Source: Lytechinus pictus (Eukaryota). From it: a DNA stretch of 64,000 bases. A program made the position numbers and the translations under genes. Below are positions 22,701-35,017 of this stretch, one piece after another (the first letter of the stretch is position 1; every line of letters starts with the position of its first letter). The DNA is taken from the NCBI RefSeq assembly GCF_037042905.1, contig NC_087247.1, forward strand, positions 6,634,001 through 6,698,000, given 5' to 3'. The notes beneath the pieces were generated by a model. The model saw only the letters and a list, made by a program, of their open reading frames with translations. It searched no databases and was not told the origin of the DNA.

Positions 22701-24018
22701 CTTTTTTTGAATGAAAGAGTGATAAACTCAAATGCTTGACTTTGGACTTGACAGGTAATCCTACTGAGAGAAGTCAAAGAACCTTAACAGTTTTGTTTCA
22801 TTGTCCCTAGTCAATTTTACCATCTGTTCTGGAGGGGAAGGGGGCAAAAAAAAAACATGAAAATGTCAGTATCTATTCAACAATTCCCAAGCACCAGGCA
22901 GAGTAGATGGCTATTGCTGTCAAAATGACCCGAATTAAATAGTCTTTATTTATTAAAGCAAACATGCTTTAAAAAAAATGCTTAAGACCTGAAAAGAACA
23001 TACAGTCATAAATCTGGAAAAAATATAAACTCGAGTCTAGGTTTGAAGTGATTGTTATAGGGGAACAAAAATTGAAACTGAATGCTAATTGCTTAAACAT
23101 ATTACAAAATGCCTTCCCCTCCAAAAAGGCTTGATTGCAGAATATACCCCTCTACAAAGTACATAAATGCTTTGTTCTATTATGCAAATATATAAATGAT
23201 TGGTTTTTCTGCAATTGAGCTTTTTAGGAGGGGGCAACTTAACATCTTTTAAATGCCAATATTTTTTAGTACCTTAATTCACCTTCCGAAGTCATTTTCT
23301 GTAAAATATTCATTATTTGGTTCTGCATCCACAATGCATCCTGCTTAGCATGGGAGCTTGCAGACATAAATACATAATGCAGGCTTTCAGGACTGGAGGA
23401 TATCGACTTGAGGGATGCCTCAGAAGTCCAAAAACATTCTAGGAATCCGGATCTATTGTCAAATACGTGGAAGATGATGGACTTGTTCAGCAGAACTGCA
23501 CTGGGAAACTGAAGTGTTCCATTGAGTGTCTCGACACTGAAAGACTTTGCATTTTGGCCTGGGATGAAATCTTTGCTAGTCCTGGTTGAACTTGAACTTC
23601 GATCCATATCATCATGATCAAAAACATCTTTCTTGCCAAGTCGAGCATCATGTTCATGAAAAAAGTTTCCATCCTGTCCCTGATTTTCCTGTGTTTTGTG
23701 ATCATTCGCCTTCCAGGGAAATTTATTGGAATGTTCACTATTAAGATTTGCAGTACCGACTTGGATCTTCCTGCTCAAAATTTTCCATTGTAAGTGGGCG
23801 TGGCGGTTCAGAAAGTTATCTTGACGGGAAGCACCACTGCCATTGCCATTGGAAGAGTCGGAGTCACTTGCATCATCTGATTCTGGGGAAATGAATTGCG
23901 AATTGTCTCTTTCTTTATAACCGGTTCCTCTTTGATGCTGTCTCCTCATCATCGGGTCGCTACCTGATACACATGATGAAGCTAATATTAACAAAGTGAC
24001 ACAAACTACCCTGGCCAT
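10757..24018 (-). CDS. PNGase F-type peptide:N-glycanase with signal peptide and PA domain (acid PNGase / Ngly2-like), 11 exons, ~768 aa
   Basis: Exons (minus): 24018-23273, 22180-22029, 20741-20560, 20087-19933, 19467-19324, 18720-18593, 14875-14716, 13570-13434, 12620-12496, 11664-11541, 11010-10757; total 2307 nt, phases consistent (intron 2 needs a GC donor). Signal peptide MARVVCVTLLILASSCVSG; PA domain (GRIALVVDGDCSFADKVKEMEASSAVGVIVY); PNGase F motifs CPPWDHT, ELGRWITAF, ITGHGSDNNGCGEFC, GTWLYGRDGWCDG. Confidence 0.9.
11095..11287. mobile_element. hAT-like MITE with poly-G/poly-C arms
   Basis: CAG...CTG termini flanked by a perfect 8-bp TSD TAGCCACC (11087-11094, 11288-11295). Confidence 0.75.
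11810..12013. mobile_element. Tc1/mariner-like MITE
   Basis: TA|CACTGGTGCTAAAAAGTTGGTGAA ... TTCACTAACTTTTTATCACCACTG|TA imperfect TIRs. Confidence 0.65.
12944..13418. mobile_element. Two tandem/nested Harbinger-like MITE family B copies
   Basis: Truncated copy 12944-~13142 followed by a complete copy ~13145-13418 with both TIRs. Confidence 0.75.
14015..14596. mobile_element. TTAA-target MITE (Kolobok-like, related family) with ~200-bp inverted arms
   Basis: TTAA|AGGGATGGTCCGGGCTGAAA ... TTTCAGCCCGGACCATCCCT|TTAA. Confidence 0.88.
15364..15915. mobile_element. TTAA-target MITE family A
   Basis: AGGTCAAGTCCACCCC ... GGTGGATTTGTCCT|TTAA. Confidence 0.82.
16122..18101. mobile_element. ~2-kb non-autonomous PIF/Harbinger-like transposon
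   Basis: CTG|GGGCCTGTTGCATGA ... TCATGCAACAGGCCC|CTG: perfect 15-bp TIR and 3-bp TSD; no transposase ORF inside. Confidence 0.85.
18312..18531. mobile_element. Harbinger-like MITE family C
   Basis: TIR TGTTTCACAAAGATTTAAG / CTTAAATCTTTGTGAAACA; related copies at ~34207, 54503 and 59789. Confidence 0.75.
21365..21764. mobile_element. Hairpin-headed non-autonomous element (Crypton-like, tentative)
   Basis: GC-rich ~170-bp imperfect hairpin, then IR pair TTATAAAATAG (21548-21558) / CTATTTTATAA (21754-21764). Confidence 0.45.
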
Positions 24019-24172
24019 GTTTCGCGCGAAAATCTAAACTTTATTGGCTCTTTTCGGAGTTGAAATCAGAGATGGGAGAGACTAGAAAGAACTGTGAATA
24101 TGCCGACAGCATTGTTGGTCAGGTGATCTTCAGGTCACGTGACGACGAATGCATTTATGGAAATGAATGGAA
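24019..24172. promoter_or_regulatory. Compact bidirectional promoter with CLEAR-type E-box, E2F-like palindrome and CCAAT box
   Basis: Divergent ATGs at 24018 and 24173; GTCACGTGAC at 24134-24143; TTTCGCGCGAAA at 24020-24031; ATTGG at ~24043. Confidence 0.65.
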
Positions 24173-27100
24173 ATGGCGTCTGCTGCCCAAGTCCAAGATC
24201 ATGAAGATTATGACAAATCACTGGTTGACGAGCTTAGAGATGTTGTTGTGAAATGTAGATGGCAATGTCTAGGACACAGACGGGAATTCCAGGGAAAGAG
24301 ATGTACCAGGTAACTCGAGATATTTGGGAAAATCTAGTCTGGTGCATGCGCATGCATTCAACGACAACGTCGATCAGCGGGATCTGGACCGCAGCCACCA
24401 CAGTCATCATAGATCGCATCCCACCGGCACCGGGCGCGCATTGCAGGTAGCCATCCCGTGCTCGTGAGCATGCACCAGCCATTGCCATTGGCATGGCATT
24501 AGCCGCTGCAGAAAATGCTGCTGCATGAATATGAAAGAGCGGCGGACAGTTATAAATTGACATTGTCAAGATTTCTGTCCATGGTCCATCGAATGAATTT
24601 TCTTTCAATTTTCAAGAAAATTTTCAGTTGGTATTTAATTATATTATAATTTATATTGTTCATGTTATGAGTAAGTCAGTGTGCGCATGTGTGTTTCGTG
24701 GTTATAAAAATTTTGATTTTGAGATGAACATATGGATATGGTTTTCTTGGAAAATGACCAGTCATTTTCAGATTGAGCAAAACAAAAGTGCCCATGTCTG
24801 AGCTGCGCACCCATTCACTTTACACACGATTCAGGGATCTGTTTTTACATTTTTAGTTTTCATTGTCTTAAAGGACAAGTCCACCCCAACAAAAAGTTGG
24901 TTTGAATAAAAAAAGAAAAATCCAACAATTAAGCATAACACTGAAAATTTCATCAAAATCAGATGAAAAATAAGAAAGTTATGACATTTTAAAGTTTTGC
25001 TTAATTTCACAAAACAGTTATATGCACATCCTGGCTGGTATGCAAATGAGGAGACTATGATGTCATCCACTTGCTATTTCTTTTGTATTTTATTATATGA
25101 AATATGAAATATTCTAATTTTCTCCTCATTGTCAAGTGATAGACAATTAATTCCTCCCTGAACATGTGGATTTAGCATAGTTTAATACTATATGGTTCAG
25201 TCAAGTTGGTCCTTATTGTCAAATATATGAAAAATGAAATATTGTATAATTCAAACAATAAAAAACAAAAGAAATAGTGAGTGATGGACATCATCGACTT
25301 AGTCACCTAGTTGTCCATATCACTGTTTTGTGAAAAATAAGCGAAACTTTAAAATTTCATAACTTTCTTATTTTTCATCCGATTTTGATGAAATTTTCAG
25401 CACTATGCTAGTTTAATTTTTCTCTATTCATTCCAGTCAGCATTTTTCTGGGGTGGACTTGACCTTTAAATAATGCTAAAGCTAGCCATGCCAATGGTGT
25501 GATAAAAGCTTTATTTTGTTTTGTTTCAATAAATCATTCCAATTTTTGGAAAATAGATCACATATAGAAAAAAGTCATTTTATCAATGACCATGGCAATT
25601 GACAATGACAATTATGGTTTATTATTGATATTTTATTTGCCTTGTATTTCAATCATTTGTATTGTATTTTATGCATTTTTGATTTATATTGAATCATATT
25701 TTCATTCCAATCTGGTAAATACGTACGCCTATTAATTATGTTGATTTATTTTAATAAAACATTTAAAAAGTTTAAAACAGTTATTATTTTTATGACATTT
25801 CAAACACAAGATGATGAAGTTATGAAGCAGACTTTCAATATGGAAAGAATTTCAATAAAACTAATCAATTTGTTGTTCTTTTATCATCTTCACTAGGATA
25901 TTCTCCAAAGATGGTGAAGATGTTGTTTTGGTGTATCTTCCTCCTGATCGATTCTATGCCATGGATGTTAGCTGTCCCCATGCAGGTATTAGAGTTATTA
26001 CATTTACTTGTTGTAGTAACCCCCTCTCCCCCCCCCCCCCTCAAAAAAAAATCTTAAAAAATTTAGCTCCCTGAAAGCTGTACCAAAGCTATACCAGTAT
26101 ACCAGTCCTGTCATGTTCCAATGTAGGTGAAAAGTTGCAAGATTTGAGTCATGTATATATATATATATATATATATATAAATCAAAGAGTTCTGCATCGG
26201 CATCATAATGTAGAAACATTATATGACCATGAAATGGGTGCAAGTAGAACATGTGTTGATCTATTAAACAGGAAGGTGCATAATGCTGATGATGAGGAGT
26301 GCACACTCTATGAAAGTAGCTGGATTCCCATGGAAGTGACATTCAAATTTCACATTTTTTACATTATTGATGATATTCTGCTTTGACCAAGTGCATTTAC
26401 ATCAAGGATGTTTCTGACTCTGTACTATTATAATCTCTTATTTATATTGGATGAATGACCTCTGAACCAATTTACATTATTACCCGAGCTATCAGAGGAA
26501 TTACAAGTCAACACAGTGCTGCTTTAATGTTTTTGCTACAAGACGATTATAAACACAGTGGAAAACTTAATATAAAAAGATATCTTGAATAAATGTATTC
26601 ACTGCTTTTATAACATATATTTTTCAACATTAAAAAAAGATTAAAAGCAGTAATTCAATTGTTCAACCTTATTTATAAATGTGATTAATGTTATTAACTG
26701 TAACTCTGCAATACTGAAAGGAAATCAAGGCTGTTTTCAAAATTCACTTCAGTCCTCTTCCATTAAAGGTATTTTAGAGCACTAAAATGAAGTTAATGGT
26801 TTGAATGGGAGAGATGCTATGACCAAGGAGATATGATATCCCCTTGCTATGACTGCATTCATTTATTATTAGGTGGAATCTATACAGATTTTTTTCTAGT
26901 TCAAAATTCTGTTGGGGGTAGATGGTAACAATGCTGCACTGCCCCTCCCCCATCCAATGATTGCCACCCCTGATGTTGAATAATGTAAATTTCATTTTGT
27001 ACCGTTCTATTTCATGGGTAAATTGATTTATTGATTTGATGCATGTTGTTTAATGTTTGCACAACTTATTCAATACCATGTAGGAGGACCACTCGATATG

Positions 27101-30100
27101 GGAGATATTGAAGAGATAGGAGGCCACACTTGCCTAGTTTGCCCTTGGCATGATTATGACTTCAGACTGGACAATGGTGAATCCACCTCTGGGCTTAAGG
27201 TGAATCCAGATAATTTATTCAATCTTGTTTATAAAAACAAACCGTACTAGGCTGGGGTATTTTTTAAGGGATCCCCCAGTCTAGTTCTGATTAAACTTGG
27301 CTGTGAGATTTGACAAACCTCATTTTAATTTGTACTTTCCATCCTGTATGAATGTAAAGTTAGCATGAGCTATTTGATGGATATCAGGGGAGTGTTTCAC
27401 GAATATGTGCAACATTGACAAATTTGCTCTGAGCCAATCAGTAGCAAGGATTTTGTTTCATGAATGCTTCCCTGGTGAATATTTCATATCAGATTGGACC
27501 TAAATGTATGACATTCAGTCAATTTTTAATCATCACTGACATGGTCATAAACCTACAGAAATCTCTAGAATTGGTGGTTTTTATTATTGATCATTTAAAA
27601 ACATTTATCTGGAAACTGATTGAAGGAGCAACCAATGAATTTTATAAAATATCAGGGTTTTTTTTGTTGTTGAAAAGTCAGTATATAATCATGTATTGTC
27701 AGTAAAGTCAACAATCTGATATTGTTCCCACTTGGTTTTGAGAGAGCTGAGTTATTTTGTAAGTGTTAATTGTTCTTTGTTCAATTTTTATTATAAAGTA
27801 ATGTGCCAAATTTTTCTCCACTTTATATTGATATGGTGGTAATCCTTACTTTCATTTCCTCTTTTTTAGCTTCTTTTTTTATTAATTTTGAATATATCAG
27901 AGTGAGACATAGAATATTTACTCATTACAGGTAAGATTTAGGTTATATTTATGATTTTTTGAAACAAAAAGTACATTAGAAACTGTTTTGAGGGCAGAAT
28001 GCTTGATATGAATTCTTGATTGTTATACCTGTTATTTTTCTGCATTCAACTCTTTGTAGTAACATTGCTACTCTTCAATTTCTTTTAGCAACCAGTACAT
28101 AGTGTGAAGGTAGTCGATGACCTTGTATACATCAATTGCAGAGCAGAACTGATCCCTTTGGATGAAAGTGATAGTTCTACGAAAGATTGTGAACAGCCAA
28201 CAAGCCAAGGTTCGAAAGACAAATAAGAATTTTTTTTTTAATGCCTTAAAAAGTTTTGTTTACGGGGGGGGGGGGGTTACTTTTTCAAAACATCGATCAA
28301 ATATTTCAACTTATATATGTAGTGGTTGGCGCCACAACAGAACCAAAAACACACTTTGGCAATTTCACAAATTAATCAATATCTGACCCCCAGTTTTCTC
28401 CATTCTTACATTTTATGATAGTATTTTTGTATTTGTCATTATACATGTAATCATTATATGTTAATTATTATTCATATCATTGTATGTAATTCAAATTCAT
28501 GAAATTAATTTGTATTATATTTTATGTTCTGTTGGAAATGAAATGAAATTCAAATTATATTAGTTATTTTATAAAAGTCATTTTATATATTAGTCATTTT
28601 AGTAGTCATATATAATAGTCTTTTTATATATTACTTATTATATTAGTCATTTTGTTTTTAATTATATTCGTCATACCGTATATTAAACATAATATTAGAA
28701 ATAATATTAATAATATAGACAATGTGTAATGATCATCATGATATTAGCTGTGCAGTGTCTGTGTGACTGCACCTCGCATTAGCAATAACCGTGATAAAAG
28801 TTGCAAACAAACTTCTGTCGATACACATTTCTGTCTTGCACCTAGAGCTTCTAGAATCTTCTTTGCTTGATTATTTTGTGGGTTTTGATCTGGCAGTTCA
28901 TATTTGATTCGTAACTTCATATTTAAGTATTAATGAAATTGATTAATCAGTTTAATTTCATTCATTACATTCTTCACTTGTAGAGTCTAGGGAAGCCAGC
29001 ATGGTCGAAGAGACAGAGTTTAATGGGGCTAGTCTGTGTGAGTTTGCTGTGAGAATCCTCAATGAACCTGATGCCAAACAAAAGGTGAGTATCATTGTCT
29101 CATGTCTTAATTTGTTCATGTTATTTCCAAAAAGCTTGCAGGCACATGCACAAAACTACGCACGATTGTCTTTTTCCAGGAGGGGATTGATCCAGCCTGG
29201 TTAATGAGACACAATACCATTTCACAGACAGTATTGTTGAAAAGTGGTTGGCAAATCCAGAGGATTGTGTCTATAAATGTAGCTTGATCTGACTCTGAGT
29301 TGAGCATTTGACGACACAAATAGCAATTGCCTTTCAGAGCCAATCAGATGTAAGAATTACAGTAGCATAGATTTATATTTTAAATCCACAATATGAATTT
29401 AACAATTGTGGATTTAAATTTTTAAGTCCACAATTCTAACCATATTTCCCACTTTCTTCATGCATGGAGACCTGTAGGTGTTATGCGTCTATTAAGAACG
29501 GTACTATTATTAGTTAGAGAAAATCACTGATATTATTTAATATTTTGCTCCTCAGAAGTACAAAAATACCCCTCCTGTAGATCCCCCTCCTCCCCCCCCC
29601 CACTTCTGGGGTTTGTATGACTAGTAGGAATGTTTTATTCATCATTTTAAATCAAACAAGGGGCAGGGGGCAACCGCCTCTTATGATTTTTTTTTAAAGT
29701 GAAGAAAGAAAAACTGAAAAAAGATGGAAAAGAGTAAAAAAGGAAACAAAGAGGAGTAATGGAAAGAGACGGTTTTGTCATGTATCGAAGCAATACTCCT
29801 ATTTTTTTTATTTAAAAAATAAATAGAAAGATAGACTGTCAATTGGAAGAAAATTAATTTCTACTTGTATTTAATTGTCAATTCTTTTGAATCAGGTTCA
29901 TCTTACAAGAGAGACGCATCAAAGATGGAAAGGAGGAGACATAGCAGAGGTCGGCTCCTGTAAACCACCTCCGATGCCGCTAAGGGATAAATCACTTAAC
30001 ATCCTTCAGCCAGGAAAAATCAAGAGAGGAAAAGGGGGCACTTTGGTAAGGACTAAACTCGTTGATCTTTGAAGACTTGCATGGTGGTACAGATGACATG

Positions 30101-33100
30101 GAAGGGGTTTACTGATCATCATGTGGTTAGTCAATAAAGGGACTGTTGGGTGTTGGAGAGATAGAGATGAAAATGAAAGTTGAGAAAGAACAAGAAGAGA
30201 TTGAGAAGTATCTATAAGGTGTAGTCCTTAAAAGGACTCAATTCAGATGAGATTGATGACTTGATTGAGATGAGAAGTACTGGTGGGGTTGATTGGAAAA
30301 AGAGCAGATGAAAAAGATGAGTTGTGAAGTTCTTGCATCAATGAAAAGTTGAGCGGCACCAAGTAGTTGAGCAGTAGAGAGTAGAAGTGATGAGGCGTCT
30401 TGACGTTCCGGGCAGCTTGACTGTCCATCATCCTTTTCAGGTCTAACCTCATGGTGAACTGTAAACCCCTTCCACGTTACTACAATGGTGTATTCATAGC
30501 CAATGGTGCCCTCTTGCAATGATTCCGTGTACACACTGCGCAATGCACCATGGGAGAAAGAGAGAAAATACAAAATTATCAGATGTGACAAGAATGGGGC
30601 ATTGCAAAACAAAATCAATTTTATGATTGCAAGTTCATTTGGGGGTCTCAAAATCAATCATTAGTCATTGCAATTAATTGCAAATGTACAGGTTTATACT
30701 GGTCTGTTTCTTACAATAGAAAGTATAAATTGATTTGTTGTAAATTACAAGTAATCTATCAATTGTAAATCTATAATTGATATATATTACAATTGATTGC
30801 AAAAAAGTCTCTTGCAACACCCCAGAACTAGGGCGTAAATACATGATGTCATACTATTCAAGTTCGGGGGGGGGGGTTGTATTGCTTGTTTCGCATCACT
30901 CTATTTGTTCAACCCAATATGATGAAATGTTAGACTTCTTTCATATTAAATCATAAAATTATTTGATGAATATAACTTGTATTATGATTTCCTACCTTCT
31001 CACTCTCTTTCAGGCAAGTAGGATAGCAGTCCTTCATTCGTTAGCTAACATTGAGCAGTGGGCTATAGATCTCTCTTGGGACATCATTGCTCGCTTCTCC
31101 GATGCAGAACTTGGCGATGGATCAAGGTTACCAAGGGAGTTTTTCACCGACTTTGCCAAAGTTGCTGATGATGAAGCTAAGGTACCAAGACAGACAACTT
31201 TGATGATGATATTTTTTTACTATCATGTGTAAATGTATTCATGGTGCATCTGAGAGTAGTGAATTTTATATTTTCAATCCTCACATTTCATCAAAGATAA
31301 AATGACGGACATTGCCGGAAAGCTGCAATGAAGGAGATGCATAGCGCCTTTAATTATAGCGCGATTCCTGCTGAGAAAATATACATTTCTATGAAGAAAA
31401 AACAAAAACTAATCATGGAGATACAAAATACTAATTTTCTCTTCCATAGGTTGGTTACTCTGCTAAAGACTGATTTGCGGGATCAAATTAGTTATAGTAA
31501 ACATGTGTTGTCATAGCAACTCATTTTCTGCAAGTCTTATAGATGATAAGTACCATGAGCATCACGTAACAGATTCAAGTGCTAAACATGTGGTTATGAT
31601 CATCATTTTTCAAAATGTTTTCCTTCTTTTTTTTTTACAAATACAGCACTTTACTCTCTTAGAAAGTCGACTTGAGAGCTTAGGAAGCAAATTTGGTGCA
31701 CTGCCGGTACATAATGGTAAGTACATTTCTTCAGTTACAGTTTTGTTTTATTAGTTTGTTCTTAGGGACTATTGCCTTTGCTAGAAAAGACATTGCAATG
31801 GTTACTGAAGTCAGTACCTCAGATAGCCCGACTCGCCTATGGGTGGTCTTAATTTCAGTATACAGGGGCTATTGGGATAGTCACATCCTTTGCCTGACAT
31901 GGCATTATCTTAGTTTAAGAGGATTGGCAAGGCACCTCAAGCAAAACTCTAGTGGGAATCCTGCACAGTGTCATTGTACCTCCGATCCTCCCATTTCATC
32001 AAGAATCTATGGAAAATGCTGGAATGATGTTGCTGTGGAAGATGCTGAGTCGAATTGATCTTGCTAAAAGTTGAGGGTCAGCAAGTGATCTGGTCAGCTG
32101 TTTGGATCATAAGGTCAATATTCCAAGGTCACAGGTCATTTTCAAATTCATTCTGTAGATTAGGAATAAAGGTTGAATTTTCATGAAACATTATGACAAG
32201 GTACAAAATTAAGGTAAGCCAGCAATCTTAATGAGTGTCGGGCTCATGAGGTCAAAGGTCACAGGACTTTTTCCGATTCACTCTGCAGGTTTATGGCAGT
32301 CTGCTGAGGAGACTAATGACAGTTTACTTGGGCGGCTAGCAGTTGTACATATGGTACATGAAGCCCGGTAAGTATATCCCTAAATTTCATGACATGAATA
32401 TTTTCCAAAAGGATAGGGAGAGTGAAAAGAGATTATATGGTTTATGTGACGAGTGCTGCTGTGTCATTGCTAAAATCATTTTTTGTCAAGCATTCTTGTG
32501 AAGTTTCCATTATTAGAGATTTATCTATACATAAGCACCCAAATTAAATGAAATCGAAATTTCGAAGTTCATATAAATGTAAAATGAAGGAAAATTATAT
32601 CAGTACAAACTTCCAAAACTATATTGATGCTGTATAAGTCTTTTTTGTATAAACCTAAAAAAATATTATCTTTAGTTTTTATGTCATATTAAGTCATATT
32701 ATACATGTATAGATAAAGTATTGTTGTATATTCAAGGTATTTACCTGTACATTTATTTGGTAAAATTTGTTATTGTCTACCGTTTCAATCTTTCTGTATA
32801 TATATATTCATTCATATTTGTTAACATTCATTATTGATTATTGTATGTTATTTCCATTCTCTTTATTGTTTATGATCTCTCATTTTGGAATGCCCTCCAG
32901 TGGTCTTGATGTCCATCCCAAAACCCAGGAGAGATTTAGACGGCAGTCTGACGCAGAGTCTGTTGAGATCTTGGATACAATCTATAACGATGAGATCACT
33001 CATGTGGCTGCTGGTCTGAAATGGTTTACATACGTATGCAGACATAGCGATCCTCCAGTTGACTGTATACCAAAGTTCCATGAACTGGTTCGGGCTCATT

Positions 33101-35017
33101 TCAGGTATGAATTACATATCGGGGGAATTCTGTAAAATGATCAACTTTTTTTTGTACATTCTGGCCCCCCCCCCCTATTTTTTCCATGGTCACTTCATAT
33201 TATGTACTGCTCAAGCCTTAATAATTTGAGAACAATATAACTTTTCGTATGAAAGAGAAGACATAGACAAATAATTTTGGGGGAATTCACACCAATAGGG
33301 GGTTGAACATACAAACTTTTATGAAATTGCCTCTTAAGGGCCCTATTGCATAAAACTTTTTCCATCGACACTTACACATTCACAGTTCTTCTTTTATGCA
33401 ACAGGCCCAAGATGTTCATGAATGTTATAGAGGCTTCTACTTTAGTCTAGTACACCAGTTTGATAGCTAATGATAGAGTTATTGTTAAAAATATCTATGT
33501 GTATATATATATATATATATAAAACGTATTTCACTAATCTACGTAAATATGTCCATAAAAAAGCATGCTGATTACGGGTAAACTTGCATAAGTTGACCTT
33601 CTCTAAGTCAAATATTCGCCCAAAGTCAAAGCATTGGTAGACAAGTTTATGCAAAGCAGGTGTTCTATGCCTTTTCTAAGTAGAATTTCTCTTAAGTCGA
33701 AAACATGTCTGTGGTCCCAAAAGATTTTACTAACCCCCCTTTCACACGGTAAAACAAAAATCGTAATTTGAATGATGATTCCAGTGAAAAATAAGGCTAA
33801 TGACGAATTTTTAGCACATGTGAAACCAAACTAGAATCACGAACGCTAGTCACAATCATGAATTTAAATTCTACTCCGAAGGTGAATTCCAGTTAAGTTT
33901 CACTCAGATTACAGTATGAATTTTCAGTGTGAAAGGTCCGATGATTCTAAAGACGAATTGCAATCGTCATTACAATAATGATTCAAGATTCACGTGTAAA
34001 AAGTCCCTCAGGCAAAGTGACTTATAGTATATTTCTTTTGTAAAACAGAGCTTTAAAGAAGCCAGTCTGGTTCAATGGGAAGTCATCTTTCATTAATCAA
34101 TGGGGTTGGTCATTACTTCATGCCTGTTCTTCTTGTAATGTTGTTCAGTTAGCTAAATGAAATAAACTTGTCTGCAGAGAAAGTAATGAATGTTGTAATA
34201 ATTCAGGGACCATGTTTCACAGAGAGTCAAGTCTGACTGATATGTACCGCGCACCTGATAATGCACAATACTATTTATTACTATGCAGTAGAGTGCTTGG
34301 AACAAGCATGATCTGACTTGCTATGATTGGTTATAAATTAAAACAAATAAAACCTCAAGTCTGATTATTTTAAGTCAGACTGAAAATCTTTGTGAAACAT
34401 CCCCTGTTTATGCCCTTCAGTTATTTTACAATCGGCAAATGAACTTTGTTCTTCATTCATCAGGGGTCATTTGAAGCCTCCGTTTAATGAAGAGGGCCGA
34501 GAAACTGCAGGAATGTCAAAAGAGGTAATACCTTTGTCCTTTGTATGGAAGCACAACTTCAATCATTTTGATATATTGCAAAATTATCTGCTACAAATAA
34601 AGCAGAAAGAAAAAAAAATCTATAATGAAGCACGAATAATGGTATGTATTTACATAGGAATGATACAATGGTTTATCTGTTGAACCTGAGGAAAATTAAT
34701 GAATATGGAATTTGATTTAAGAATTATTTGAATCTTATCACTGCTCTTGAAATTCTTATTTACATGCTTTTGACAATGATATTTATATAATATAAATTTC
34801 ATATATTTCTGTATTGGCAATGTTGTTTAGGTATTGATATACAATTAATATTGCTTTCACAAAACAGATTAGATGTTTTCTAGATGATTTTGTTCAACAG
34901 TCTTCAATAGAATACTTTTCTTTCTGCTTTCCAGAATACCCATCTCCTATTTTTCCAACCACTTAATCTTTATGATTTACTTTCTTTCAGTGGTACTTGC
35001 CGTTGGTGAAGACGTGA
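24173..35017 (+). CDS. Rieske [2Fe-2S] domain / DUF455-type ferritin-like di-iron domain fusion protein, 12 exons, ~440 aa
   Basis: Exons: 24173-24309, 25897-25985, 27084-27199, 28089-28209, 28984-29084, 29896-30045, 31014-31181, 31647-31716, 32289-32367, 32901-33104, 34464-34524, 34991-35017; 1323 nt, all GT-AG, phases consistent (alternative ATG 24167). Rieske CPHAGG...CPWH; di-iron ligands [33 protein letters not shown]; C-terminal LKPPFN..GR..AGM..EWY. Confidence 0.9.
24872..25465. mobile_element. TTAA-target MITE family A (complete)
   Basis: TTAA|AGGACAAGTCCACCCC ... GGGGTGGACTTGACCT|TTAA. Confidence 0.88.
30099..30474 (-). repeat. Old interspersed repeat bracketed by 14-bp inverted repeats
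   Basis: TGGAAGGGGTTTAC (30099) / GTAAACCCCTTCCA (30461); interior resembles 35150-35460 in opposite orientation. Confidence 0.4.
33338..33408. mobile_element. Minimal Harbinger-like MITE (termini resemble the 16122 element)
   Basis: GGGCCCTATTGCATAAAA ... TTTTATGCAACAGGCCC. Confidence 0.55.
34207..34405. mobile_element. Degenerate MITE family C
   Basis: TGTTTCACAGAGA ... ATCTTTGTGAAACATCCCC. Confidence 0.55.

What the first reader, a model, noticed from the sequence alone, without database searches (positions are those of the whole stretch)
24173..35017. Animal Rieske + di-iron ferritin-like (DUF455) fusion: candidate oxygenase with a built-in electron-transfer domain and unknown substrate
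Seen: after splicing, one polypeptide has a complete Rieske ligand set (CPH...CPWH), an acidic linker, and a full E/ExxH/E/ExxH di-iron set (NIE, DEAKH, VHE, DEITH). Known: ferritin-like di-iron carboxylate hydroxylases such as COQ7 and MiaE need an external electron donor; DUF455 proteins are functionally uncharacterised to my knowledge. Inference: the Rieske cluster feeds electrons to the di-iron site, giving an uncharacterised hydroxylase/oxidase. No signal peptide is evident.
Basis: partly seen in the sequence, partly recalled or inferred. Interest (0 to 1): 0.75.

Follow-up and report, generated by a model that had tools for sequence, protein, structure and literature searches.

The report
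Sea urchin Rieske–di-iron (DUF455) fusion gene
This is a real, expressed 12-exon sea-urchin gene that joins a small iron-sulfur electron-carrier domain to an uncharacterised two-iron enzyme domain; the same fusion is already catalogued, unnamed and unstudied, from fungi to frogs, so it is a conserved "known unknown", not a new discovery.

Summary
Twelve GT..AG exons (window 24167-35017, + strand) encode a 442-aa protein. It has an RFESD-like Rieske ferredoxin domain (C74, H76, C97, H100), a disordered acidic linker, and a complete DUF455 ferritin-like domain (E254, E294, H297, E344, E377, H380).

Stranded RNA-seq from three runs crosses the critical Rieske-to-DUF455 junction (28209>28984) with 14, 12 and 14 reads. 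No reads lie in that intron, and one 2387-nt transcript contig carries both halves.

The protein is 97.7% identical to a Lytechinus variegatus RefSeq model. The same architecture occurs across opisthokonts (echinoderms, fish, amphibians, lamprey, molluscs, cnidarians, a sponge, chytrids, basidiomycetes, ichthyosporeans). No amniote appeared in the hit lists.

No paper, solved structure or reviewed entry assigns a function. One microbial eukaryote carries cytochrome b5 in place of the Rieske domain, which supports an electron-donor role.

In alphaproteobacteria the unfused gene often sits directly downstream of a Bcp-type peroxiredoxin gene. This keeps a peroxide-reductase reading alive.

Best reading (about 0.55): a self-contained di-iron oxygenase or oxidase with a built-in ferredoxin and an unknown substrate. 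The architecture is already in public databases; the function remains open. Interest is moderate.

The parts
24167..24309 (+). Exon 1: start codon and N-terminal acidic segment, beginning of the Rieske domain
   Evidence: ORF and donor CAG|GTAACT; junction 24309>25897 seen in 7/12/9 stranded reads and in the X1 contig; identical start in P0001
25897..25985 (+). Exon 2: Rieske box 1, C74-P-H76
   Evidence: junction 25985>27084 in 15/20/18 reads
27084..27199 (+). Exon 3: Rieske box 2, C97-P-W-H100
   Evidence: Pfam Rieske_4 2.2e-9, 38 bits, above the 28.4 cut-off; junction 27199>28089 in 19/14/15 reads
28089..28209 (+). Exon 4: end of the Rieske fold and first half of the acidic linker; donor AAG|GTTCGA, with an in-frame TAA 12 nt into the intron
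   Evidence: fusion junction 28209>28984 in 14/12/14 reads; zero depth across 28350-28949
28984..29084 (+). Exon 5: rest of the linker and first DUF455 helix
   Evidence: junction 29084>29896 in 18/28/25 reads
29896..30045 (+). Exon 6: DUF455 positions 9-59, conserved PPxxPxR and basic PGKxKRGKGGT loop
31014..31181 (+). Exon 7: helix 1 with E254 (NIE) and helix 2 with E294 (DEAK)
   Evidence: Pfam DUF455 1.2e-18, 68 bits; the genome search own 5.8e-15
31647..31716 (+). Exon 8: begins with H297, completing ExxH
   Evidence: Pfam DUF455 positions 109-131
32289..32367 (+). Exon 9: helix 3 with H340, H343, E344
   Evidence: Pfam DUF455 positions 133-157
32901..33104 (+). Exon 10: helix 4 with D376-E377-x-x-H380
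   Evidence: Pfam DUF455 1.9e-21, 77 bits; 96% identical to P0001 residues 347-413
34464..34524 (+). Exon 11: C-terminal DUF455 helices
   Evidence: Pfam DUF455 positions 226-244; matches the family consensus
34991..35017 (+). Exon 12: last 8 codons (WYLPLVKT) and TGA stop
   Evidence: identical C-terminus in P0001

Best explanation
This is a single expressed gene for a soluble, probably cytosolic 50-kDa enzyme. An N-terminal RFESD-type Rieske [2Fe-2S] ferredoxin domain is tethered by a roughly 30-residue acidic, disordered linker to a DUF455 ferritin-like four-helix-bundle domain with a six-ligand (E, ExxH, E, ExxH) di-iron site. Proposed mechanism (inferred, not shown): an external NAD(P)H-dependent reductase reduces the Rieske cluster. 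The Rieske domain docks on the bundle, within one chain or across a dimer, and passes single electrons to the di-iron centre. The reduced centre activates O2 to oxidise or hydroxylate a specific substrate. The substrate is unknown. A conserved basic loop (PGKxKRGKGGT; a KR-containing version in bacteria) and many invariant polar residues around the site suggest a polar or anionic molecule, for example a phosphorylated, CoA-linked or nucleic-acid substrate. Shown here: gene structure, fusion transcript, both domain assignments, ligand conservation, fold, phyletic spread. Inferred: metal content, direction of electron flow, O2 chemistry, substrate class.
For: Fusion transcript: junction 28209>28984 in 14/12/14 stranded reads, an empty intron, and one 2387-nt contig spanning E1-E6 and beyond. 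Domains: DUF455 5.7e-96 and Rieske_4 4.8e-17 on the 97.7%-identical P0001; exon-wise matches in the window itself. Ligands: C74 58/59 and H76 55/56 among rows with a residue in those columns; E254 65/67, E294 65/67, H297 67/67, E344 67/67, E377 66/67, H380 67/67. Fold: domain model pLDDT 96, pTM 0.93, with ferritin-like di-iron neighbours at Z 13-15. The Rieske domain is closest to mouse RFESD 3D89 (4.2e-16 by sequence; Foldseek 1.5e-7) and to oxygenase ferredoxins, including T4moC in complex with its di-iron hydroxylase (4p1c_H). Electron-donor logic: among 59 full-length representatives the only extra domains are Rieske (23) or cytochrome b5 (1), and the b5 fusion is eukaryotic. Long purifying selection: 50-63% identity from urchin to sponge, cnidarians, fish and amphibians. 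The ligand pattern is the six-ligand oxygenase type and lacks the ExxE on helix C that rubrerythrins carry (read from the sequence; the rubrerythrin pattern is from my own knowledge).
Against: There is no biochemical data for any DUF455 protein. No specific structural relative exists beyond the generic ferritin-like fold (Foldseek PDB best E 0.04; only uncharacterised HI_0077 in Swiss-Prot models). The relative position of the two domains is not confidently predicted (pTM 0.71 against pLDDT 90), and the cluster-to-cluster distance could not be measured. In alphaproteobacteria the unfused gene is often co-oriented and translationally coupled with a Bcp-type peroxiredoxin gene, which points towards peroxide chemistry at least as much as towards substrate hydroxylation. 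Most bacterial and plant members carry no fused donor.
Confidence: 0.55

Rival explanations
1. Rubrerythrin-like peroxide (or O2) reductase. The fused Rieske domain, or cytochrome b5, feeds electrons to a di-iron site that reduces H2O2 or organic hydroperoxides. This would be an antioxidant enzyme and not a substrate hydroxylase.
For: The architecture is analogous to rubrerythrin, which is an electron-transfer domain fused to a ferritin-like di-iron domain (my knowledge). A Bcp/PrxQ-type peroxiredoxin gene (AhpC-TSA, 1e-39 to 2e-42) lies directly upstream on the same strand in 13 of 40 sampled proteobacterial loci and in 12 of 21 alphaproteobacterial loci, with a 4-nt start/stop overlap in three. 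The gene is single-copy and widespread in about 36% of sampled Pseudomonadota, including 1.4-2 Mb genomes. Structural neighbours include bacterioferritin, Dps-like proteins and symerythrin.
Against: There is no Pfam Rubrerythrin match. Helix 3 carries a single Glu ligand and not the rubrerythrin ExxE (plus my knowledge). The domain is about 280 aa, with extra conserved loops and many invariant polar residues, which is more typical of a substrate-specific enzyme. The bcp linkage was seen only in one synteny-rich group (probably one class) and may be partly inherited gene order.
Confidence: 0.2
2. RNA or tRNA nucleoside hydroxylase of the MiaE type: the di-iron domain hydroxylates a modified base, with the basic loop gripping the phosphate backbone.
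For: MiaE is a ferritin-like di-iron tRNA hydroxylase that needs an external donor (my knowledge). The conserved Lys/Arg/Gly loop lies before helix 1. Housekeeping-type neighbours (tyrS, cysS, prfB, guaA) and presence in small genomes are consistent with a housekeeping role.
Against: There is no Pfam MiaE match and no closer fold match to MiaE than to any other ferritin-like protein. The neighbours look like inherited synteny and not an operon.
Confidence: 0.1
3. Two adjacent genes (an RFESD-like Rieske gene ending at the TAA 12 nt past exon 4, and a DUF455 gene starting at the ATG in exon 5) that the reader wrongly joined.
For: There is an in-frame stop just inside intron 4, the donor GTTCGA is weak, and an ATG codon (M163) lies in exon 5.
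Against: 40 spliced reads in three stranded runs join exon 4 to exon 5, intron 4 has no coverage, and one contig carries both halves. M163 is Leu in L. variegatus. The fusion is conserved in hundreds of species.
Confidence: 0.01
4. Iron handling and not catalysis: a ferritin-like ferroxidase or iron-mobilising module with an attached reductant, by analogy with bacterioferritin and its ferredoxin Bfd.
For: The top VIA matches include Dps-like proteins and bacterioferritins (Z 14-15).
Against: These Z values are at the level the tool calls common for helical bundles. The matches cover only the 140-150-residue core. The extra conserved N- and C-terminal elements and the single-copy, low-level expression do not suggest a storage cage.
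Confidence: 0.05

Closest known systems
Orthologues: Lytechinus variegatus LOC121411775; zebrafish-type si:ch73-314g15.3; 'uncharacterized protein HI_0077-like' / 'Rieske domain-containing protein' of fish, amphibians, molluscs, cnidarians, chytrids
   Same: Same two-domain architecture, length (about 420-450 aa) and ligand sets. 97.7% identity to the L. variegatus protein and 50-63% to other animal phyla.
   Different: Nothing of substance: this is the same gene in another sea urchin. None of these orthologues has a known function.
Haemophilus influenzae HI_0077 (P43935) and bacterial DUF455 / COG2833 proteins
   Same: Same DUF455 domain. Predicted structures superpose with TM 0.86 and 28% identity. 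Alphaproteobacterial members are 40-52% identical to the urchin domain.
   Different: The bacterial proteins lack the fused Rieske domain. In alphaproteobacteria the gene is often paired with a Bcp peroxiredoxin gene. Their function is also unknown.
RFESD, the soluble Rieske ferredoxin of mammals (mouse structure 3D89)
   Same: Closest solved relative of the N-terminal domain: 4.2e-16 by sequence, 32-33% identity, same Pfam family Rieske_4, same CxH...CxxH ligands.
   Different: RFESD is a stand-alone 157-aa protein with no known partner. Here the domain is covalently linked to DUF455. The urchin genome has a second, separate RFESD-like exon on another contig.
Toluene-4-monooxygenase type systems (Rieske ferredoxin T4moC plus di-iron hydroxylase T4moH)
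   Same: A Rieske ferredoxin delivers electrons to a carboxylate-bridged di-iron four-helix-bundle enzyme. T4moC appears among the fold matches of the Rieske domain (4p1c_H, 1vm9).
   Different: In those systems the components are separate proteins, and the hydroxylase is a large multi-subunit complex with an effector protein. Here a single chain has a 280-aa di-iron domain that belongs to none of those Pfam families.
Rubrerythrin
   Same: An electron-transfer metal domain is fused to a ferritin-like di-iron domain in one chain (my knowledge).
   Different: Rubrerythrin uses rubredoxin and not Rieske, has a seven-ligand site with ExxE on helix C, and acts as a peroxidase in anaerobes. There is no Pfam Rubrerythrin match here.
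COQ7, MiaE, aldehyde-deformylating oxygenase
   Same: Small soluble or peripheral ferritin-like di-iron oxygenases with the E/ExxH/E/ExxH ligand set that need external electrons. ADO-like structures give the longest structural alignments (183 residues, Z 14.6). COQ7 models are the next Swiss-Prot hits (E 0.04).
   Different: Similarity is only at superfamily level (12-18% identity). None of these Pfam families is matched.

Membership tests
Pfam DUF455 (PF04305) | HMM match above the gathering score (34.3 bits) over the full model | tested here: met
   Window exons 7 and 10 alone score 68 and 77 bits. Exons 6-11 tile positions 9-244 of 247 in order. P0001 scores 321 bits over positions 2-246.
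Pfam DUF455 (PF04305) | Conserved E / ExxH / E / ExxH motif set of the family | tested here: met
   E254, E294, H297, E344, E377 and H380 are present in the window protein and conserved in 65-67 of 67 homologues.
Rieske [2Fe-2S] ferredoxin, RFESD-type (Pfam Rieske_4, PF22543) | CxH ... CxxH cluster ligands | tested here: met
   C74-P-H76 and C97-P-W-H100; conserved in nearly all fused homologues.
Rieske [2Fe-2S] ferredoxin, RFESD-type (Pfam Rieske_4, PF22543) | HMM match above cut-off and Rieske fold | tested here: met
   Exon 3 alone scores 38 bits against a 28.4 cut-off. P0001 scores 62.8 bits. 3D89: E 4.2e-16, Foldseek 1.5e-7 with rmsd 2.0 over 114 columns, VIA Z 14.5.
Rieske [2Fe-2S] ferredoxin, RFESD-type (Pfam Rieske_4, PF22543) | Actually binds a [2Fe-2S] cluster and shuttles electrons | not testable with these tools
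   Needs UV-vis or EPR measurements on recombinant protein.
Ferritin-like di-iron carboxylate oxygenases (superfamily level) | Four-helix bundle carrying the ligands on helices 1-4 | tested here: met
   The AF2 domain model (pLDDT 96) has helices at 240-267, 281-307, 332-360 and 364-393, each carrying its ligand(s). VIA gives Z 13-15 to ADO-like, bacterioferritin, R2 and BMM chains.
Ferritin-like di-iron carboxylate oxygenases (superfamily level) | O2 activation and substrate oxidation | not testable with these tools
Specific characterised families (COQ7, MiaE, ADO, AurF, R2, BMM hydroxylases, PaaA) | Sequence-profile or clear fold match to that family | tested here: not met
   Pfam reports only DUF455 and Rieske families. 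Foldseek PDB best E is 0.04. Swiss-Prot models of COQ7 and ADO score E 0.04-0.1 with TM about 0.4.
Rubrerythrin | Rubrerythrin-type di-iron domain (extra Glu, ExxE on helix C) plus a rubredoxin domain | tested here: not met
   There is no Pfam Rubrerythrin or rubredoxin match. Helix 3 reads H-x-x-H-E with a single Glu. The rubrerythrin ligand pattern is recalled from my own knowledge.
Single-chain Rieske-DUF455 fusion (opisthokont orthogroup) | Both domains on one mRNA in this genome | tested here: met
   Junction 28209>28984 appears in 14/12/14 reads of three stranded RNA runs, with no reads in the intron, and one contig carries both halves.

The most novel reading that the evidence does not exclude
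DUF455 is an unstudied class of di-iron enzyme that works with a dedicated RFESD-type Rieske ferredoxin. In opisthokonts the two were fused. Its substrate is a housekeeping metabolite or oxidative-damage product linked to peroxiredoxin function, as suggested by the bcp-DUF455 operon in alphaproteobacteria, the closest bacterial relatives found in the one collection scan run (whose pattern-based search was biased toward sequences resembling the eukaryotic query). Amniotes lost the enzyme while keeping the stand-alone paralogue RFESD. Solving it would assign a function both to a family present in roughly a third of the Pseudomonadota genomes sampled and to the orphan mammalian ferredoxin family.
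Probability: 0.3. Interest if true: 0.75.

Novelty: new variant of a known kind. Interest (0 to 1): 0.5.

Why it matters
Di-iron carboxylate enzymes carry out difficult oxidations, including methane and toluene hydroxylation, ubiquinone and tRNA hydroxylation, and alkane formation, and they normally need a separate electron carrier. This family, found from bacteria to frogs, has no known reaction. In animals and fungi it comes pre-assembled with its probable donor, which makes it an easy single-protein target for biochemistry. It also offers the first concrete clue to what RFESD-type soluble Rieske ferredoxins are for. Its apparent loss in amniotes, and its pairing with a peroxiredoxin gene in alphaproteobacteria, give testable hypotheses. 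The sequence itself is not new: orthologues are already in RefSeq and UniProt with both Pfam domains marked.

Tried and rejected
This gives no verdict, and the job was counted.

(2) The cluster-to-cluster distance could not be measured, because model coordinates are not exposed (one search shows no structure files).

(3) The search for homologous proteins with the Rieske domain alone found only one 125-aa S. purpuratus fragment. The RFESD relationship therefore rests on the PDB and Pfam matches only.

(4) Literature: 'DUF455' mostly returns DUF4553/4557/4559 (LCORL and others). The real mentions are list entries only: a coral domain table, an H. influenzae annotation as 'ferritin-like', and a Methylobacillus proteomics hit that decreased with lanthanum. 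PF04305, COG2833, At1g06240 and the zebrafish gene name gave nothing useful. RFESD papers gave no function. Two further text searches found nothing.

(5) Protein atlas by language-model features: only generic di-iron oxygenase clusters at scores of 0.78 or below, which are leads only.

(6) Bacterial neighbourhoods: YhdP, M23 peptidase, bactofilin, AnmK, TyrRS, RF, DUF489, GMP synthase, CNNM, a radical-SAM protein, MetZ-like, LpxH-like, PpiB and CysS look like inherited synteny, and I rejected them as functional clues. One locus has tesB directly upstream.

(7) A second phylum-level search started from a MAG labelled Flavobacteriaceae resampled the same phylum and added nothing.

(8) The look-up of encoding contigs on P0087, P0097 and P0066 gave a fungal locus or contigs too short to use.


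Full report
**Gene structure**

I joined them at canonical GT..AG sites. This gives 12 exons: 24167-24309, 25897-25985, 27084-27199, 28089-28209, 28984-29084, 29896-30045, 31014-31181, 31647-31716, 32289-32367, 32901-33104, 34464-34524 and 34991-35017. Together they form one frame of 442 codons ending in TGA. The calculated protein is 49.9 kDa with pI 5.4. Its N-terminus is acidic, with no hydrophobic signal-like segment (read from the sequence, no predictor run).

**Domain content**

Translated exon by exon, exon 3 matches Pfam Rieske_4 ('soluble Rieske-type ferredoxin') at 2.2e-9. Exons 6 to 11 match DUF455 in strict order, covering model positions 9-59, 62-108, 109-131, 133-157, 159-223 and 226-244 of 247. 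Exons 7 and 10 each exceed the family cut-off on their own. A six-frame scan of the whole 812-Mb assembly finds DUF455 only at this locus.

**Is it one gene?**

The exon 4 donor is weak (AAG|GTTCGA), an in-frame TAA lies 12 nt into intron 4, and exon 5 contains an ATG.

Three stranded rRNA-depleted RNA-seq runs of the same species label, plus one assembled run, were laid on 24150-30149.
- All five junctions in that stretch are confirmed at exactly the predicted bases.
- The exon 4 to exon 5 junction (28209>28984) has 14, 12 and 14 reads from 11-14 distinct starts.
- Depth is zero across 28350-28949.
- All reads are in the orientation expected for a + strand transcript.
- A single 2387-nt contig runs colinearly through exons 1-6 and continues. 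Its length fits a roughly 360-nt 5' UTR, the 1329-nt CDS and a roughly 700-nt 3' UTR.

The two-gene reading is therefore refuted for the samples available. They rest on the identical exon-by-exon match to an independent protein model and on HMM collinearity.

**Identity of the gene**

A full HMMER scan of 1.84 billion representatives with exon 10 found P0001 as best hit. P0001 is the RefSeq protein LOC121411775 of Lytechinus variegatus. It has 442 aa and differs from my spliced model at 10 positions with no gaps. The window is therefore from a sea urchin close to L. variegatus.

I used P0001 as a proxy identifier wherever a tool needed a whole protein. On P0001, Pfam gives DUF455 at 5.7e-96 (residues 184-436) and Rieske_4 at 4.8e-17. 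Met163, the possible internal start, is Leu in L. variegatus.

**Distribution**

Searches with P0001 and with the Xenopus orthologue return the same architecture (PF04305 plus Rieske families, 420-450 aa) from:
- all echinoderm classes;
- lampreys, a chimaera, ray-finned fishes (zebrafish-type name si:ch73-314g15.3), coelacanth, lungfish, and all three amphibian orders;
- bivalves, a bryozoan, sea anemones and a calcareous sponge.

The Xenopus list runs down to invertebrates at 50% identity without one mammal, bird or reptile. The gene was therefore most likely lost in the amniote stem. This is inferred from absence in a top-120 list, not from a genome search.

Look-up of more distant representatives shows the fusion also in chytrids (Blyttiomyces, Irineochytrium, Polyrhizophydium), basidiomycetes (Mixia, Malassezia) and unicellular relatives of animals (Chromosphaera, Corallochytrium). 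The fusion is therefore as old as opisthokonts.

Among 59 full-length cluster representatives, all carry DUF455, 23 carry a Rieske domain, one carries cytochrome b5 instead, and no other domain occurs. The b5 fusion lies beside a CDC48 gene on its contig, so it belongs to a microbial eukaryote.

In bacteria the domain stands alone. 107 of 301 evenly sampled Pseudomonadota genomes have a match above the family cut-off (nearly all a single copy), including genomes of 1.4-2 Mb. The closest bacterial relatives found were alphaproteobacterial (40-52% identity); that scan used patterns derived from the mainly eukaryotic alignment.

**Conservation and fold**

In a 67-sequence alignment:
- the Rieske ligands C74 and H76 are conserved in nearly every row that has the domain (58/59 and 55/56), and P98 of the CPWH box is equally conserved;
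- the six di-iron ligands E254, E294, H297, E344, E377 and H380 are conserved in 65-67 of 67;
- H248, D259, D263, H318, H340, H343, R346, D349 and D363 are conserved at the same level.

A basic glycine-rich loop (PGKxKRGKGGT) precedes helix 1 in eukaryotes, with a KR-containing counterpart in bacteria.

AlphaFold2 gives a confident full-length model (pLDDT 90) with a disordered linker at 143-163 but only pTM 0.71, so the relative placement of the domains is uncertain. The DUF455 domain alone gives pLDDT 96 and pTM 0.93. It is a four-helix bundle with extra N- and C-terminal helices.

The Rieske domain matches:
- mouse RFESD (3D89) best: sequence E 4.2e-16, Foldseek 1.5e-7, VIA Z 14.5;
- then the ferredoxins of carbazole, naphthalene, toluene and biphenyl oxygenases, including T4moC bound to its di-iron hydroxylase.

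The DUF455 domain has no specific solved relative:
- Foldseek finds nothing better than E 0.04.
- VIA-align gives Z 13-15 to Dps-like proteins, bacterioferritins, ADO-like proteins, R2, R2lox and BMM subunits. The tool's own notes call this level common for helical bundles.
- Among reviewed-protein models only the uncharacterised H. influenzae HI_0077 matches (1.1e-14, TM 0.86). COQ7, bacterioferritin and ADO follow at E 0.04-0.1.
- AlphaFold cluster representatives that match are all unnamed or DUF455 proteins.

**What is known**

Full-text searches found no paper that characterises a DUF455 protein. They found none that gives RFESD a biochemical partner either.

**Bacterial context**

I pulled 21 loci from the species-genome collection and 40 more from an even sample of Pseudomonadota. 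I called ORFs, clustered them, and scanned the recurrent neighbours.

Most recurrent neighbours are housekeeping genes that travel with lineage-specific synteny: YhdP, an M23 peptidase, bactofilin, TyrRS/AnmK, RF, HflD-like DUF489, GMP synthase, and purF/metZ-like/lpxH-like/ppiB/cysS.

One neighbour stands out. A 150-175-aa AhpC/TSA peroxiredoxin of the Bcp/PrxQ size class (1e-39 to 2e-42) lies immediately upstream on the same strand:
- in 13 of the 40 sampled loci;
- in 12 of the 21 first-set loci, with three more within 2 kb;
- with a 4-nt start/stop overlap in three loci;
- in three further genomes among the short-flank loci.

The pair persists where the outer neighbours differ, although all cases probably belong to one class. 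One locus has an acyl-CoA thioesterase II gene 11 nt upstream. This is suggestive but not decisive evidence for a link to peroxide or lipid-hydroperoxide metabolism.

**Interpretation**

The safest mechanistic statement is that the N-terminal domain is an electron-input module for a redox-active di-iron site. Three observations support it:
- the domain is of the ferredoxin type and is not a catalytic Rieske oxygenase;
- evolution has independently attached a different one-electron carrier (cytochrome b5) at the same position;
- Rieske ferredoxins are the natural donors of di-iron hydroxylases in the toluene monooxygenase class.

What the di-iron site then does is open. I favour substrate oxidation or hydroxylation (0.55). 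The ligand set is the six-ligand oxygenase type and not the seven-ligand rubrerythrin type. The domain is also large, with many invariant polar residues and a conserved basic loop, which suggests a defined polar or anionic substrate.

Because of the fused-donor analogy and the bcp operon, I give the rubrerythrin-like peroxide/O2 reductase reading 0.2. A MiaE-like RNA hydroxylase gets 0.1, an iron-handling role 0.05, and the two-gene artefact 0.01.

**Novelty and score**

The sequence, the fusion and both Pfam assignments are already in RefSeq and UniProt for hundreds of species, so the finding is not a discovery of a new architecture. What remains open is the function of a family conserved from alphaproteobacteria to amphibians, and its relation to the orphan mammalian ferredoxin RFESD. 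As a mechanism it would be a new variant of a known kind: a di-iron carboxylate enzyme with its Rieske ferredoxin fused in cis. The 'animal' novelty dissolves, while the open biochemical question is real and now has two concrete leads, the b5 alternative and the bcp linkage.

Noticed in passing
window 24750-25550 (intron 1): A repeat with very high coverage on both strands in all RNA runs and in assembled contigs (summed word depth up to about 1e5). It has many variant positions and loose ends at 24867/24868 and 25468-25470. It is probably an abundant, transcribed interspersed repeat or transposon fragment.
   Followed up: no
window 24629/24630 > 25896/25897: A minor alternative donor in intron 1 (3+1+1 reads, against 28 for the main junction) would extend exon 1 by about 320 nt through stop codons. 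It is probably a non-productive isoform.
   Followed up: no
window 29070: All RNA reads (22/22, 33/33, 28/28) read A where the assembly has G. This changes D186 to N, which is the residue in the L. variegatus protein. It is a fixed difference or polymorphism between the assembled individual and the RNA donors.
   Followed up: partly
window 23266-24018 (- strand) and 24019-24166: A divergent neighbour whose first coding exon starts with a signal-peptide-like MARVVCVTLLILASSCVSG lies about 150 bp from the start codon of this gene. The X1 transcript contig extends 342 nt upstream of 24150, so the 5' UTR may overlap that exon on the opposite strand, or be spliced from further upstream.
   Followed up: no
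G000:C9:25034771-25034881 (L005:1525-1743): A second Rieske_4 exon elsewhere in the genome contains the box-2 motif CPWHKW and resembles mouse RFESD around that motif (E 0.003). It is probably a stand-alone RFESD-like paralogue, which would mean the duplication predates the echinoderm-vertebrate split.
   Followed up: partly
L062, L069, L073 and 10 further Pseudomonadota loci; L008-L027: A conserved bcp (AhpC/TSA peroxiredoxin)-DUF455 gene pair in alphaproteobacteria, overlapping by 4 nt in three loci. To my knowledge and in the papers searched, it has not been described.
   Followed up: yes
P0106 (Blyttiomyces, 723 aa): A chytrid representative carries two Rieske domains ahead of DUF455. This could be a gene-model artefact or a tandem-donor variant.
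   Followed up: no
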